The notes: generated by a model not told the origin, from the sequence alone. Shown: positions 26,554 through 52,998, counted from the first letter of the stretch. The stretch: DNA of 64,000 nt from Gracilinanus agilis (GCF_016433145.1 NC_058131.1:285242513-285306512); one strand, 5' to 3'. Made by a program: numbers and translations.

Positions 26554-27315
26554 TTACTCTTCTGTCCCTGCCGGGGGGAATAAAGATTTGTCTTCCAAGG
26601 ATGAAGCTTGCACTTCCTCCTCAGCTTCCTCTGCCTCTTCTGCTTCCTCTGCCTCTTCTGCTTCCTCTGCCTCCTCCTCTGCCTTGTCTACTTCTTCTGC
26701 CTCCTCCTCTGCCTTGTCTACTTCTTCTGCCTTCTCTGCTTCTTTTGCCTCCTCTGCCTTCTCTACTTCTGCCTCCTCTTCTGCCTTCTCTACTTCTTCT
26801 GCCTCCTCCTCTGCCTCTTCTGCTGTCTCCTCTGCCTCCTCTTCTGTCTCCTCTACATCCTCTGCTGTCTCCTCTGCATCTTCTGCTGTCTCCTCTGTCT
26901 CTTCTGCTGTCTCCTCTGTCTCCTCTGTCTTCTCCTCTGCCTCTTCTGTATCCTCTGTCTTCTCTGCCTCCTCTTCTGTCTCCTCTGTTTTCTCCTCTGC
27001 CTCTTCTGCTGTCTCCTCTGCCTCCTCTCCCTCCTCTGTCTCCTCCTCTGTCTCCTCCTCTGTCTTCTCTGCCTCTTCTGCTGTCTCCTCTGTCTCCTCT
27101 GTCTTCTCCTCTGCAGTCTCCTCTGTCTCCTCCCCTGCCTCCTCTGCTTCTTCCCTTGCCCCCTTTCCCTCTGGCTGCTCTTCTGTGGCCACTTCTGCCA
27201 ATTCTAGTCGTATGGGAGAGGCAGAAAAGATTACTTTCTTCCCCTTACTCTTTTTTCTTGTGGTCAAGGAGATAGCAGGCAGTTTGAACCGACTCAGGGA
27301 GTCTGGAAAGGAAAT
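26554..27315 (-). CDS. CFAP157: CFAP157 copy 1 exon 9 with long acidic Glu/Ala/Thr tail
   Basis: ttctgttttcag acceptor, phase 0; ISFPDSLSRFKLPAISL...(EEA/EET repeats)...PPAGTEE-TAA, 253 aa. Confidence 0.8.
   Translation of the reverse strand: MSFPDSLSRFKLPAISLTTRKKSKGKKVIFSASPIRLELAEVATEEQPEGKGAREEAEEAGEETEETAEEKTEETEETAEEAEKTEEETEEETEEGEEAEETAEEAEEKTEETEEEAEKTEDTEEAEEKTEETEETAEETEETAEDAEETAEDVEETEEEAEETAEEAEEEAEEVEKAEEEAEVEKAEEAKEAEKAEEVDKAEEEAEEVDKAEEEAEEAEEAEEAEEAEEAEEEVQASSLEDKSLFPPAGTEE
26579..26584 (+). terminator. Probable PTRH1 poly(A) signal, lying antisense within the last codons of CFAP157 copy 1
   Basis: First AATAAA seen after the PTRH1 stop. Confidence 0.6.
26614..27153 (-). 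repeat. Degenerate triplet-periodic coding repeat (GAG/GAA/GCA/ACA), polypurine on the - strand
   Basis: ~540 nt of EEA/EET/TAEE/VDKA units; the + strand is almost all C/T. Confidence 0.95.
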
Positions 27316-27429
27316 CTGAAAACAGAAAATTCAGAGAAATTCATCTGAATTATCTTCTATTTTATTCCATCCTTTTCTTCCCCACCCCCTGAAGGCTCCC
27401 ACCCCCAATACTTCAGGGGCAGCGGATAC

Positions 27430-27580
27430 CTTATAGTTTCTGAGACGAGTGGTTTTGGATAGCAATTGGATATCTTTTGGGTTGAAGGGAGTGTGGGATG
27501 GCTGGAACATTGCGCTTATGCTCGACAGCTTGTATGGCATGTTGACGGTCATCCGCTTGTGGGGCTTGAAGCCCTTGCAT
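27430..27580 (-). CDS. CFAP157: CFAP157 copy 1 exon 8
   Basis: ccttttcag/gtatcc; CKGFKPHKRMTVNMPYKLSSISAMFQPSHTPFNPKDIQLLSKTTRLRNYK (cf. human IPPNPQDLRLLSYITR). Confidence 0.85.
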
Positions 27581-27978
27581 CTGAAAAGGCAATAAGTCAG
27601 GCCCATGGAGTCCAGAGAAAAAAGAGACGATGCAGCAGTGACGACCCCTACCCCCACCCACCCTTTTGTGGACAGTGAAGAATCCCTTTCCTGAAGGCTT
27701 CCACTCCATCCCCACGGGATCTCCTTGTTAGGCAGTGTGGTGTAAGAGCTTTAGCACTGGACTTGAAGTCAGGTTACTAACCCGGGACATTTACTAGATG
27801 CGTGACCATGGGCTAGTCACTCAATCTTTTAGGGGCTCAATTTCCTCATCTGTAAAATGGGAGTAATAATAGACCCCCACCACCACCACCACTAAATTTT
27901 GGGAAGAGCACAAAGGCAAACCTCATCGTACTACACCAATGTGAATTATTATTAATAATACTATTAGCCACTGCTCAC

Positions 27979-28154
27979 CTCGCCTGCACTGTATTGGAAG
28001 GGTGAGTTCTTTGTCGGGCTCCCATGAACTCAGTCAGATGTGGCCCCAGGACCACAGCGTGACTCAGCAAGGACATTAGCTGTTGCAGCAACTCCTTCTG
28101 CTCCATCTGGAAGATCACATCAAACTGGCCTTCCACAGTGGGCTTGGGTTGCAT
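27979..28154 (-). CDS. CFAP157: CFAP157 copy 1 exon 7
   Basis: ttcccctag/gtgagc; MQPKPTVEGQFDVIFQMEQKELLQQLMSLLSHAV...NTVQA. Confidence 0.88.
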
Positions 28155-28892
28155 CTAGGGGAAGGCAAGTGGAAGGTGTGTGTAAGGAATCTGCAGTCCA
28201 CAGTGCAAGGTACACACATGCACACACCCCTTCTTTTTTAAGATGAACTTATTGTACATCAACAAACATGAACCATTGTGCTATTTCCAGGAAATGAATG
28301 TAAAATGAGGCTATATGCAAAGTGGGGTCTTGCCTATGTAAGGGCTTGCGTCCATAGCCTGTATGCCCTAGCCCCTGCTCTCTGTGCCTATCTGTAGCAT
28401 AGGAGCTGATGTATTAGAAGCTGCTGCGTTAGTGCTTTGCCAAAAACAAAAAAGCACCTCCTTTTTATTACAATGAACTCATTGCACATCCTTACAAACA
28501 TGGACATTTCCCAATAGGGAGAACAGAAAAAGAGGACTGCATGGGACACCACAGATCTCCAATATGAAAAAAAATTTACAGATTTAACATGCTCCAACCT
28601 TGCCCTAATTGCCCAAAGTTCCCTTCTGAATTTCCTTCCACTCTTGAATTTTTTTTAGATGTTCCATTGATACTCTTTTCTTTTTAGGGGGCAGAAAAGC
28701 GTATCATTACTAAAGGCCTCTCTAAATAAAAGCCTTCCCTCTGCAAGCTATCTTGTTCTGCACCTATAGTCTACTGACCATGAACCCAATTAAAATGTAA
28801 CTAGGAAACATTTAATAAAATAAAAATATAGCACAATATAGATAATGCTAATTTGTGGTTTTCTAGGTCACTATGTGGCCAGCAGTGTTCTA

Positions 28893-29095
28893 TTTTTTTT
28901 TTAAACGCTTATCTTCCATCTTAGAATCAGTACTATACATTGATCCCAAGGCAGAAGAACAGTAAGGGCTAGGCAATGGGGGTTAAGTGACTTGTCCAGG
29001 GTCACTCAACTAGGAATTATCTGAGATTACATTTGAATCCAGAACCTCCTGTCTCTAGGCCTGGCTCTCAATCCACTGAGCCAGCCAGCTGCCCC
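28893..29095 (-). mobile_element. SINE1_Mdo-like SINE
   Basis: Reverse-oriented full-length copy; another follows at ~29190-29405. Confidence 0.75.
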
Positions 29096-50893: not shown

Positions 50894-51165
50894 CTAACAT
50901 GATATTCTCCATGGTGAGCTGATCTTTGGTTTCCTGGAACTCATGGCGAACCTGGGCCAGTTGGGCCTCAAAGGCATCCTTCTCTACCTCTTTGGAGACC
51001 TGCAGCCCATGTATCTGTGAGTTAAGGTCAATGATCTCATCCACACGTTGGTTGAGAGTCCGTTTTAGGAAGGAAACAACCTCCTTTTTGTTGTGGGTTA
51101 GCTGCTGAAACTCATCCTGGAACACTTTCTCCTGCTTGGATAACTCTTCCCATTTTGTTTTGTAC
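50894..51165 (-). CDS. CFAP157: CFAP157 copy 2 exon 2
   Basis: tttctcaag/gtaagg, 272 nt; [13 protein letters not shown]...[13 protein letters not shown]...[18 protein letters not shown]. Confidence 0.96.
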
Positions 51166-51908
51166 CTTGAGAAAGAGGCAGGCAAGGGTTGGAGGAGCAG
51201 AGTACTTACTGCTGTGTGGTCGTAAAGATCTGGGTTAATATATTCAAAGGGAGAAAATAGGTTATCTAGTGGTTCTCCAGTGGTTTTTCCTACCCAGTAA
51301 GGAAGGAGACAAGAGACAACATGTTCAGGAACTGGACTATTGATGCTTTCTTCCTACTTCCTGGGAGCAAAATACAAGAAGATTGAAGATCCAAGGGGGC
51401 AGAGAGGAGGCCATAAGTATCTTAGGGTTCAACATTTGGTTCTAATATCAGCCTTAGAGAACTACCAGAAAAAATGAAACTCTTCAAAGCCAGGAGGCCA
51501 AAGTGATTTGGAAAGAGTCAAAGAGATTTTTGCTTATGTAAAATGGAGCAGTTGACTACCTGGTGTGACTGTAGGACAGCGCCACCCTTTCCAAAAACAT
51601 TCCCCTCTACTGGCCTGTCATTTATGCTGCAAATGCTAGCAATCACCATCCATCCCTGTGGATTGCCCTACCCATCCCTTGGAAAATGCAGATCCCTCAC
51701 TGAAGGGTTAGCACAGCAAGTCCCCATGAGCTCTGCAGAAATCTGGGCTCACTCACTCAGCCCAGGCAGAGGATATAGGGGTGCTGAGGGGGCAGGAAAG
51801 GGCCCAGAAAGAAGAGCTGAGCAATCCTGAAGTCAGACTCTCAGTTTCCCACTATGTCCCAGAGCTGTCCCAGGAGCCAGGCACAGTGACTGTGCAGCCT
51901 CCTGGACT

Positions 51909-52008
51909 CGAGCTTCCTGGTATTTAGAGCTTGTCTGTTCTTTCAGAGCTGATGAAACCGAGCTTCCTGGTATTTAGAGCTTGTCTGTTCTTTCAGAGCT
52001 GATGAAAC
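51909..52008. repeat. Perfect 50-bp tandem duplication
   Basis: CGAGCTTCCTGGTATTTAGAGCTTGTCTGTTCTTTCAGAGCTGATGAAAC x2. Confidence 0.95.
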
Positions 52009-52029
52009 CCAGAGGGACCATCTATTCCA

Positions 52030-52620
52030 ACTCCTTAATTTTTTAAAACTTAGAAAAAAATTTCAATTACATGTAGAAATAATTTGGGACAATTGTCATC
52101 TGACATTTTTTGATTCATTCTCTCCTTCCTCCTTCCACGAGGCAGTAAATAATCTGATATAGTTTATACCAGTGCTGTTATGCAATATATATTTCCATAT
52201 TCCTCATGCCATAAAAGAAGACACATATCACACATACAAGAAATATTTCATGAAGGAAATAAAGTGCAAGATGGTGTGCTTTGATCAGCAGTCAGACTCC
52301 AATAGGCCCTTCTTTGGCCGTGGATAACATTTTTTAGCCCAAGTCTCTTGGGATTATCTTGGAACCTTGTTTTGCTGACAATACTTCAGGCCTTCACAGT
52401 TGATTATCATCCAGTATTTCTGTTACTGCATATACAGTTCTCCTGGTTCTGCTCACCTCACTTTGCATCAGTTCATCTAAGTCTTTCCAGGATTTTCTGA
52501 ACTCATCCTAGTCACCATTTCTTATGGCACAGTAGTATTCCACTACAACCATATACCACAACTTGTTCAGCCATTCCCCAACCGAGGGACAACCCAAGTC
52601 TCCAATTCTTTGCCACTACC
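52030..52620 (-). mobile_element. L1 3' fragment
   Basis: Similar to 56575-57380, including ...TTGTTCAGCCATTCCCCAA... L1-type sequence. Confidence 0.55.
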
Positions 52621-52864
52621 AACCCCTTTGTTTTTACAGATGGGGAAAGTGAGGCCCAGAGAGGGAGGGAGTCTCACAGTTGGTTCAAGTCAAAACTAGG
52701 ATTGACACCAATAATAATGACTAATATTCAGAGTCCTCAGCACTAAAGCCAAGATGGGGATGTATGGCAACCGTTCTCCCAGGGGCCCAGGCCTGTGGCT
52801 CCCATTGCCCCAACAGCTTTCAGATCTTCCGCTGACTGTTGTCTGGACCTCCTAACTCACTGAC

Positions 52865-52998
52865 CTCTCAAGCCGATTCTCCAGGTCCCGAATTTGGATG
52901 TGGTAGAACTCCCTGGTTTCTGTCAAGACAGATGCCAAGGCATTAGTAGCCTCCTGGACATCTATTTTCTTTTTCTTCTCTTTCTTCTTAGGAGCCAT
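52865..52998 (-). CDS. CFAP157: CFAP157 copy 2 exon 1
   Basis: gccATGG; MAPKKKEKKKKIDVQEATNALASVLTETREFYHIQIRDLENRLE; gtcagt donor (human MAPKK...EFYHIQIRDLEDRLAR). Confidence 0.93.

What the first reader, a model, noticed from the sequence alone, without database searches (positions are those of the whole stretch)
26554..52998. Two intact, deeply diverged tandem CFAP157 genes
Seen: two complete 9-exon genes on the - strand (26554-37498, 737 aa; 42161-52998, 518 aa). Exons 2-6 have identical lengths (272/154/268/131/151 nt), splice phases are identical, GT-AG sites are canonical, and there is no frameshift or premature stop. Hand-counted amino-acid identity between the copies is 61/90 (exon 2), 23/50 (exon 3) and 39/89 (exon 4), so the duplication is old and both ORFs have been preserved. 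Established: human has one CFAP157 here; in mouse it is a FOXJ1-target basal-body/flagellar protein needed for normal sperm flagella. Inference: a marsupial (perhaps didelphid) paralog pair with divided or new function. Copy 2 looks human-like; copy 1 is rewired at its C-terminus.
Basis: partly seen in the sequence, partly recalled or inferred. Interest (0 to 1): 0.85.

Follow-up and report, generated by a model that had tools for sequence, protein, structure and literature searches.

The report
Two old CFAP157 paralogs in opossum
The window, from the agile gracile opossum, carries two intact tandem copies of the sperm-flagellum gene CFAP157; public annotation already lists both in all marsupial orders sampled, and each copy has kept a different one of two ancient C-terminal motifs.

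Summary
Two 9-exon genes lie on the minus strand, at 26554-37498 (737 aa) and 42161-52998 (518 aa). All 16 introns are GT-AG, and exons 2-6 are 272/154/268/131/151 nt in both.

The window is Gracilinanus agilis. Copy 2 is 100% identical to RefSeq XP_044515632.1 ('CFAP157-like'). Copy 1 exons 1-8 match XP_044517296.1 ('CFAP157'). So both genes are already annotated.

Both paralogs are annotated in Monodelphis, Dromiciops, Trichosurus, Notamacropus, Petaurus, Macrotis and Sarcophilus (copy 1 also in Sminthopsis and Antechinus). Each forms a 100%-supported clade. The duplication followed the monotreme split and preceded the marsupial radiation. A pre-therian origin is not rejected (AU p 0.31 and 0.35).

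Divergence is symmetric, not 'copy 2 human-like'. Each copy kept only one of two ancestral C-terminal motifs: YxxGDLGLVPR in copy 2, NPxD-I/L-xxLSxTTRL in copy 1. I read this as subfunctionalisation; that is an inference.

The 737-aa form of copy 1 is an in-frame acidic expansion in exon 9. One spliced contig supports the exon 8-9 junction. The RefSeq 516-aa model retains intron 8.

Ortholog dN/dS and copy 2 expression could not be tested. The scan had already noted the acidic tail on this window (s1-153852).

The parts
26554..37498 (-). CFAP157 paralog 'copy 1' (c1 clade). It has 9 exons and encodes 737 aa when intron 8 is spliced. RefSeq XP_044517296.1 (516 aa) is the intron-8-retaining form.
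   Evidence: Exons: 37498-37350, 36206-35935, 32196-32043, 31618-31351, 30352-30222, 29627-29477, 28154-27979, 27580-27430, 27315-26554. All introns are GT-AG. The blastp alignment to P0259 is 99.8% over residues 1-486 (485/486); the one mismatch is residue 485, past exon 8, so exons 1-8 (484 aa) are identical. It falls in the c1 clade with 100/100 support.
42161..52998 (-). CFAP157 paralog 'copy 2' (c2 clade). It has 9 exons and encodes 518 aa, equal to RefSeq XP_044515632.1 'CFAP157-like'.
   Evidence: Exons: 52998-52865, 51165-50894, 48519-48366, 47875-47608, 45532-45402, 44324-44174, 42894-42707, 42558-42390, 42250-42161. All introns are GT-AG. It is 100% identical over 518 aa to P0159. 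A poly(A) signal lies 58 nt after the stop.
26620..27174 (-). Acidic low-complexity expansion inside exon 9 of copy 1 (residues 532-716: 102 E, 34 A, 21 T, 12 K; net charge -94).
   Evidence: Tandem Repeats Finder reports periods of 21/42/63 nt with about 70% matches. Australidelphian orthologues have only a short EKETEEEE patch at this position, and the conserved end QASSLEDK-S/P-LFP follows the repeat in frame.
27316..27429 (-). Intron 8 of copy 1, seen both spliced out and retained.
   Evidence: Run X31 has one contig joining 27430|27315 (it skips 114 nt, with ends CT..AC on the + strand, which is GT..AG on the - strand; depth 6.6). A second contig runs through the intron (27288-27419, depth 5.6).
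42471..42503 (-). Motif A (YKLGDLGLVPR, residues 452-462) kept in copy 2.
   Evidence: YxxGDLGLVPR is conserved in elephant shark, sturgeon, frog, platypus, 13 eutherians and all 10 c2 sequences.
27502..27534 (-). Degenerate motif A in copy 1 (YKLSSISAMFQ, residues 450-460).
   Evidence: All 9 c1 sequences have Y-K/R-L-S/T-x-L/I-S/T/N-x-x-F in place of GDLGLVP.
27439..27483 (-). Motif B (NPKDIQLLSKTTRLR, residues 467-481) kept in copy 1.
   Evidence: NPxD-I/L-xxLSxTTR is conserved in platypus, 13 eutherians and all 9 c1 sequences. The LSRTTRLG core is present in elephant shark.
42417..42452 (-). Position of motif B in copy 2, where the motif is lost (DSQESEPFKSRR, with a 4-residue deletion).
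   Evidence: All 10 c2 sequences lack LLSxTTR here.
36616..36903 (-). Non-coding block in intron 1 of copy 1, shared with copy 2.
   Evidence: 81.7% identity over 290 nt to 51668-51942, which is higher than exon 2 (75.8%). The block is unique in the window. Mismatches are not 3-periodic (12/13/14). There is no Rfam hit.
51668..51942 (-). The matching intron-1 block of copy 2.
37543..37588 (-). Short block upstream of the copy 1 ATG, shared with copy 2 (53011-53054).
   Evidence: 82.6% identity over 46 nt. No canonical RFX X-box was found.
26087..26278 (+). Last coding exon of PTRH1, convergent with copy 1.
   Evidence: Pfam PF01195, E 4e-9. Its AATAAA at 26579 lies within the last codons of copy 1.
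10794..19893 (-). TTC16 exons. They mark conserved synteny.
   Evidence: tblastn with the TPR part of fused CFAP157-TTC16 models P0288 and P0190.

Best explanation
Shown:
- The window, from Gracilinanus agilis, holds two functional-looking tandem paralogs of CFAP157 in the order copy 2, copy 1, PTRH1 (opposite strand), TTC16. STXBP1 lies outside the window. It sits upstream of the copy 2 orthologue in Monodelphis.
- Both paralogs are annotated in five marsupial orders. Each forms its own fully supported clade inside Theria, with platypus outside.
- The duplication is therefore older than the marsupial crown and younger than the monotreme split.
- Orthologues of both copies keep open reading frames. 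They diverge at rates like the single eutherian gene. The two copies have departed from the ancestral sequence by equal amounts.
- The ancestral protein carried two short C-terminal motifs behind its long coiled coil. Every copy 2 orthologue keeps YxxGDLGLVPR and has lost NPxD-I/L-xxLSxTTRL. Every copy 1 orthologue does the reverse.
- In Gracilinanus, copy 1 exon 9 carries an in-frame expansion of about 185 residues, rich in Glu, Ala and Thr. Its exon 8-9 junction is used in at least one transcript.

Inferred:
- The pair is kept by subfunctionalisation of a basal-body/flagellar scaffold. Each paralog would retain one of two partner-binding modules on a shared coiled coil. The partners could be the reported CEP350 interaction and one other.
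- Both proteins would then be needed, possibly as a heterodimer, to do what the single protein does in eutherians.
For: Gene models:
- 16 of 16 introns are GT-AG, and each model has a single terminal stop.

Identity with RefSeq:
- Copy 2 is 100% identical to XP_044515632.1. Copy 1 exons 1-8 (484 aa) equal XP_044517296.1; the alignment over residues 1-486 is 485/486.

Distribution:
- c2 is in Monodelphis, Gracilinanus, Dromiciops, Trichosurus, Notamacropus, Petaurus, Vombatus, Phascolarctos, Sarcophilus and Macrotis.
- c1 is in Monodelphis, Gracilinanus, Dromiciops, Trichosurus, Notamacropus, Petaurus, Macrotis, Sminthopsis, Sarcophilus and Antechinus.
- The tandem order is the same in Monodelphis and Petaurus.

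Tree:
- c1 has 100/100 support, c2 100/100, eutherians 100/100, and Theria against platypus 99/97. The c1+c2 grouping has 89/65.
- Three conserved sites share a derived state in c1 and c2. None support either alternative grouping.

Constraint:
- Mean pairwise identity over matched species pairs is 73.9% for c1 and 77.4% for c2. Eutherian inter-ordinal pairs are 77-80%.
- Between the paralogs, dN is 0.46-0.53 and dS is at or above 1.4.

Symmetry:
- Clade-fixed changes are 11 and 11, or 12 and 12 under the second count.

Motifs:
- Motif A is present in 10/10 c2 and 0/9 c1. Motif B is present in 9/9 c1 and 0/10 c2.

Tail:
- The conserved C-terminal end follows the repeat in frame. A spliced contig joins 27430|27315.

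Function of the family:
- CFAP157 is a FOXJ1 target and CEP350 interactor, and mouse loss gives male sterility. This is Weidemann et al. 2016, as cited in PMC5487853 and PMC11914644.
Against: - No orthologous DNA from other marsupials could be fetched ('sample's file is too large'). Branch dN/dS was therefore not computed, and purifying selection rests on ORF retention and protein rates.
- Transcription of copy 2 in Gracilinanus was not tested. One of the two read-laying runs was lost to a filter.
- The copy 1 junction rests on one low-depth contig. That contig also carries the 3' part of intron 7. An intron-8-retaining contig has similar depth.
- The functions of the two motifs are unknown, so the 'partner-binding modules' and the heterodimer are conjecture.
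- The c1+c2 sister grouping is weak, so the timing relative to eutherians is unsettled.
- Older Monodelphis models read the exon 9 repeat in other frames, so the acidic tail may not be conserved even among didelphids.
Confidence: 0.8

Rival explanations
1. The duplication is older than the marsupial-eutherian split. Eutherians then lost one copy, so one marsupial paralog is the true orthologue of human CFAP157 and the other is a gene that eutherians lack.
For: The AU test does not reject c2+eutherians (delta lnL 0.51, p 0.31) or c1+eutherians (delta lnL 2.55, p 0.35). Support for c1+c2 is only 89/65 on a branch of length 0.032.
Against: The best tree joins c1 and c2. Three conserved sites carry a derived state shared by c1 and c2, and none favour either alternative. 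This history needs one more event, a loss. Eutherian proteins keep both motifs, as expected of an unduplicated gene.
Confidence: 0.22
2. This is asymmetric neofunctionalisation. Copy 2 keeps the ancestral CFAP157 role, and copy 1, with its altered C-terminus and acidic tail, has a new role.
For: Copy 1 lost the most conserved motif, GDLGLVP. It evolves slightly faster (73.9% against 77.4% mean identity). In didelphids it gained a long tail.
Against: The stems are equal (0.58 and 0.53). The counts of fixed changes are equal. Copy 2 has itself lost motif B, which copy 1 and all eutherians keep. The tail is absent from all australidelphian c1 proteins, so it cannot explain why the pair has been kept.
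Confidence: 0.15
3. One of the two copies is a non-functional relic, an unexpressed or decaying pseudogene whose frame is open by chance.
For: Copy 2 expression was not tested here. The RNA-like runs X31-X33 were listed as holders of the copy 1 3' end but not of the copy 2 stretch. The only copy 1 contigs seen include unspliced intron.
Against: Both copies have full-length open frames with canonical splice sites in 10 species each, spanning the whole marsupial crown. Their protein divergence is like that of the constrained eutherian gene. Clade-specific motifs are conserved.
Confidence: 0.03
4. The second copy is an assembly artefact, either a false duplication or an uncollapsed haplotype.
For: None was found.
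Against: The copies are only 43% identical in protein, with different intron sizes. The same pair is present in independent assemblies of at least nine other species.
Confidence: 0.01

Closest known systems
CFAP157 (C9orf117) of eutherians, e.g. mouse Cfap157
   Same: Full-length homology at 47-51% identity. The long coiled coil aligns without gaps across exons 2-6. The LP-containing C-terminal end is shared. Both sit in the STXBP1 / PTRH1 / TTC16 neighbourhood.
   Different: Eutherians have one gene, carrying both C-terminal motifs. Here there are two genes, each carrying one motif. Copy 1 of Gracilinanus adds an acidic tract of about 185 residues.
RefSeq models XP_044515632.1 ('CFAP157-like') and XP_044517296.1 ('CFAP157') of Gracilinanus agilis
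   Same: They are the same two genes. Copy 2 is identical over 518 aa, and copy 1 is identical over exons 1-8.
   Different: The RefSeq copy 1 model runs on into intron 8 and stops after 516 aa. The spliced form, supported by one contig and by exon 9 homology to australidelphian orthologues, gives 737 aa.
Marsupial 'CFAP157' / 'CFAP157-like' pairs, e.g. Dromiciops XP models P0199 and P0151, and the Monodelphis 518-aa and 764-aa genes
   Same: They are orthologous pairs in the same tandem order.
   Different: Australidelphian c1 proteins are 542-561 aa and have no acidic expansion.
Duplication-degeneration-complementation (subfunctionalisation) of duplicated genes
   Same: Two ancestral modules are divided reciprocally between the daughters. 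Both daughters have been kept for a long time, and their divergence is symmetric.
   Different: The classic model concerns regulatory modules. Here the partition is seen in protein motifs, and expression partition was not tested.

Membership tests
CFAP157 protein family | Significant full-length sequence similarity to named CFAP157 orthologues | tested here: met
   Against eutherian CFAP157, copy 1 reaches E 8e-149 and copy 2 reaches E 5e-160. The exon 2 profile gives 82 proteins at E<=1e-10.
CFAP157 protein family | Placement inside the vertebrate CFAP157 gene tree | tested here: met
   Both copies lie inside Theria, with platypus, sauropsids, frog and fishes outside.
CFAP157 protein family | Conserved neighbourhood (STXBP1 - CFAP157 - PTRH1 on the opposite strand - TTC16) | tested here: met
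   PTRH1 and TTC16 are in the window. STXBP1 (Sec1 domain) lies upstream of the copy 2 orthologue in Monodelphis. STXBP1 itself lies outside this window.
CFAP157 protein family | Curated domain model (Pfam) | not testable with these tools
   No Pfam family covers CFAP157. The exon pieces gave only sub-threshold coiled-coil noise, and the precomputed Pfam field is '-' for all orthologues.
CFAP157 protein family | C-terminal motif A, YxxGDLGLVPR. I derived this feature here from its conservation from shark to eutherians; it is not a published family definition. | tested here: inconclusive
   Present in copy 2 and all c2 sequences. Replaced in copy 1 and all c1 sequences.
CFAP157 protein family | C-terminal motif B, NPxD-I/L-xxLSxTTRL. 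I derived this feature here as well. | tested here: inconclusive
   Present in copy 1 and all c1 sequences. Deleted in copy 2 and all c2 sequences.
CFAP157 protein family | FOXJ1-dependent expression in motile-ciliated cells and testis, basal-body localisation, and CEP350 and tubulin interaction | not testable with these tools
   Known only for mouse (Weidemann 2016, via PMC5487853 and PMC11914644). No canonical RFX X-box was found in the window.
Paralog pair kept by subfunctionalisation | Both copies under purifying selection | tested here: inconclusive
   ORFs are retained in 10 species each, and protein rates are like the eutherian gene. Paralog omega is 0.08-0.47 with saturated dS. Orthologue dN/dS was not computable.
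Paralog pair kept by subfunctionalisation | Complementary loss of ancestral sub-functions | tested here: inconclusive
   Reciprocal motif loss is shown. That the motifs carry separate functions, and that expression is partitioned, were not tested.

The most novel reading that the evidence does not exclude
The marsupial pair is a natural 'split' of CFAP157. Motif A and motif B would be two separable partner-binding modules, for example CEP350, tubulin or a mid-piece factor. The two paralogs would then be mutually dependent, probably as a coiled-coil heterodimer. Together they would rebuild the ancestral two-motif scaffold, and losing either would give the sperm-flagellum defect seen in the mouse knock-out.
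Probability: 0.3. Interest if true: 0.5.

Novelty: already known. Interest (0 to 1): 0.3.

Why it matters
As stated, the finding adds nothing to public annotation. RefSeq already names both genes in this genome and in at least nine other marsupials.

Three things go beyond the annotation:
1. The pair is as old as, or older than, the marsupial radiation, and it is kept in all five orders sampled.
2. Two short C-terminal motifs conserved from cartilaginous fish to eutherians have been divided cleanly between the copies. This points to two separable functional modules in a poorly understood male-fertility protein, and it says where to mutate the mouse or human gene.
3. The RefSeq model of copy 1 in this species is probably a retained-intron form. 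The spliced protein carries a lineage-specific acidic tract.

No paper in the held library mentions a CFAP157 duplication in marsupials.

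Tried and rejected
- **Pfam on exon pieces.** Only sub-threshold coiled-coil noise; no CFAP157 family exists.
- **Fetching orthologous DNA for dN/dS.** Monodelphis and Petaurus loci came back without DNA ('sample's file is too large'), so I dropped this route.
- **Read laying on copy 1 exons 3-9 (27160-32300).**
- **Run X5 (organism A).** Only 35-nt repeat pieces under 90% alike were laid, so it gave no information.
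- **Word shares in the run index.**
  - The organism A shares of 5-12% fit a related species' conserved words, or the PTRH1 3' UTR, so I did not use them as expression evidence.
  - The weaker point, that X31-X33 are not listed as holders of the copy 2 stretch, appears only under the pseudogene rival.
- **RFX X-box in the promoters.** No canonical match anywhere in the 64 kb, and no relaxed match near either start. The idea is dropped.
- **Rfam on 26000-54000.** No family matched.
- **Solved structures.** None for this family.
- **Aardvark 'CFAP157-like' as a sign of an older duplication.** Rejected, because it pairs with the aardvark's own CFAP157 (100/100).
- **False duplication.** Rejected (see rival explanations).
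- **Weidemann 2016.** The paper could not be read, as it is not held.

Full report
**1. Observation**

A six-frame comparison of the two halves of the region gave a collinear series of matching open segments on the minus strand.
- Splice sites were found by script. For exons 2-6 exactly one well-formed acceptor/donor pair per copy reproduces the lengths 272/154/268/131/151 nt.
- Exon 1 donors and exons 7-9 complete two 9-exon models of 737 and 518 aa.
- All 16 introns are GT-AG, and each model has a single terminal stop.
- Identity is 61/90 in exon 2, 24/51 in exon 3 and 40/90 in exon 4. Overall it is 216/502 (43%), with dN 0.46-0.53 and dS at or above 1.4.

**2. Identity of the genes and of the genome**

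A profile of exon 2 searched against 1.84 billion representatives gave 82 proteins at E<=1e-10.
- The best full-length hit, P0006, is 'CFAP157-like' of Macrotis lagotis. Searching with it listed the vertebrate CFAP157 family.
- Copy 2 is 100% identical over 518 aa to XP_044515632.1, 'CFAP157-like [Gracilinanus agilis]'.
- Copy 1 is identical over exons 1-8 to XP_044517296.1, 'CFAP157 [Gracilinanus agilis]', which is 516 aa.
- So the window is G. agilis and both genes are already in RefSeq.
- No Pfam family exists for this protein, and there is no solved structure.

**3. Distribution**

Copy 2 orthologues (518-524 aa) are annotated in Monodelphis, Dromiciops, Trichosurus, Notamacropus, Petaurus, Vombatus, Phascolarctos, Sarcophilus and Macrotis.

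Copy 1 orthologues (542-561 aa, longer in didelphids) are annotated in Monodelphis, Dromiciops, Trichosurus, Notamacropus, Petaurus, Macrotis, Sminthopsis, Sarcophilus and Antechinus.

In Monodelphis the order is STXBP1, a 518-aa gene, then a 764-aa gene. In Petaurus it is a 522-aa gene followed by a 547-aa gene.

In the window, copy 1 is followed by the last exon of PTRH1 on the other strand (Pfam PF01195) and by TTC16 exons.

**4. Gene tree and timing**

I built an IQ-TREE tree (LG+C20+F+G4) of 42 proteins.

| Grouping | Support (UFBoot/SH-aLRT) | Stem length |
|---|---|---|
| c1 clade | 100/100 | 0.58 |
| c2 clade | 100/100 | 0.53 |
| Eutherians | 100/100 | 0.32 |
| Theria against platypus | 99/97 | - |
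| c1+c2 together | 89/65 | 0.032 |

- AU tests do not reject c2+eutherians (p 0.31) or c1+eutherians (p 0.35).
- Among sites conserved within clades, three carry a derived state shared by c1 and c2, and none favour either alternative.
- The duplication therefore lies between the monotreme split and the marsupial crown. It is most simply placed on the marsupial stem, but an earlier therian origin is open.
- The aardvark 'CFAP157-like' is a separate, recent duplicate.

**5. Constraint and symmetry**

- Over 21 matched species pairs, mean identity is 73.9% for c1 and 77.4% for c2. Inter-ordinal eutherian pairs are 77-80%.
- Gracilinanus against Monodelphis is 89.3% for c1 and 89.0% for c2.
- At 171 sites with a well-defined ancestral state, 104 are kept by both copies. 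Each clade has 11 fixed changes, and 17 (c1) and 16 (c2) sites are variable. The second count gives 12 and 12.
- Mean identity of the Gracilinanus copies to eutherians is 47.1% for copy 1 and 49.1% for copy 2.
- So neither copy is the 'conserved' one. Orthologue dN/dS could not be computed, because no marsupial DNA could be fetched.

**6. Reciprocal motif loss**

Behind the coiled coil, the ancestral protein has two short motifs.

| Motif | Present in | Absent or replaced in |
|---|---|---|
| A: YxxGDLGLVPR | Elephant shark, sturgeon, frog, platypus, 13 eutherians, all 10 c2 | All 9 c1, which have Y-K/R-L-S/T-x-L/I-S/T/N-x-x-F |
| B: NPxD-I/L-xxLSxTTRL | Platypus, 13 eutherians, all 9 c1; core in elephant shark | All 10 c2, which also have a 4-residue deletion |

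These counts come; window coordinates are. The last motif, F/L-S/T-LP, is kept by both copies.

This clean partition is the main thing I add to the annotation. I read it as subfunctionalisation at the level of protein modules. What either motif does is not known.

Mouse CFAP157 is a FOXJ1 target that interacts with CEP350. It is needed for sperm flagellum and mid-piece formation (Weidemann 2016, as cited in PMC5487853 and PMC11914644).

**7. The copy 1 C-terminus**

- Exon 9 of australidelphian c1 encodes about 60-75 residues. These include a short EKETEEEE patch and end in QASSLEDKPLFP....
- In Gracilinanus the patch is replaced by about 185 residues (102 E, 34 A, 21 T, 12 K; net charge -94). 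They are encoded by an imperfect 21/42/63-nt purine repeat.
- The conserved end then follows in the same frame. This supports the 737-aa reading.
- The RefSeq 516-aa model instead reads on into intron 8, as Petaurus P0262 also does.
- Run X31 carries the same organism label as the DNA run X12, which holds 81-87% of the sampled words of the two query stretches. Its contigs total 91 million letters, a transcriptome-like size.
- One X31 contig joins 27430 to 27315, with GT..AG on the minus strand. Another runs through intron 8 at similar depth. The spliced contig also carries the last 158 nt of intron 7.
- So the junction is real, but the material is partly unspliced.
- Older Monodelphis models read the repeat in RG-rich and RRQ-rich frames. 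The newer 764-aa Monodelphis product could not be retrieved. Whether the acidic frame is shared by didelphids is therefore open.
- The scan had already noted this tail on the same window (s1-153852).

**8. What was not achieved**

Copy 2 was therefore never laid, and its transcription in this species rests only on the identical RefSeq model.
- The word shares of organism A runs were not usable as expression evidence.

**9. Verdict**

They are already annotated, and the pair is marsupial-wide rather than didelphid. Interest is modest.

Noticed in passing
window 36616-36903 and 51668-51942: A 290-nt non-coding block in intron 1 is shared by the two paralogs at 81.7% identity, higher than coding exon 2 (75.8%). 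It is unique in the window, shows no codon periodicity and has no Rfam hit. It may be a conserved regulatory element or an old conversion tract.
   Followed up: partly
window 37543-37588 and 53011-53054: A block of about 46 nt just upstream of both start codons is 82.6% identical. It contains CTTCCTTAGCAAC and CTTTTAAAGGG. No canonical RFX X-box was found anywhere in the window.
   Followed up: partly
window 26087-26600: The last PTRH1 exon (+) ends 276 nt from the copy 1 stop (-). The PTRH1 AATAAA at 26579 lies inside the last codons of copy 1. Copy 1 has no canonical poly(A) signal for about 1.1 kb. The two 3' ends therefore probably overlap in antisense.
   Followed up: partly
window 27827-27876: A MIR-core-like SINE in intron 7 of copy 1 tripped the read-laying filter. 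Many copies of another SINE-like repeat of about 200 nt lie in the introns of both genes, for example 35402-35633, 28898-29096, 45726-45925 and 48833-49064.
   Followed up: no
proteins P0253, P0294, P0295 (Monodelphis copy 1 models): Older Monodelphis models translate the exon 9 purine repeat in RG-rich and RRQ-rich frames rather than the acidic frame. The cause could be real indels, old assembly errors or model artefacts. The newer 764-aa model could not be read.
   Followed up: partly
proteins P0210 and P0266 (Orycteropus afer): Aardvark has its own recent CFAP157 duplicate. The two proteins are sister to each other with 100/100 support, so this is independent of the marsupial event.
   Followed up: partly
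window 10794-19893: TTC16 exons lie on the minus strand. Several public 'CFAP157' models in other mammals (P0190, P0227, P0288, P0283) are fusions with TTC16 or STXBP1.
   Followed up: no
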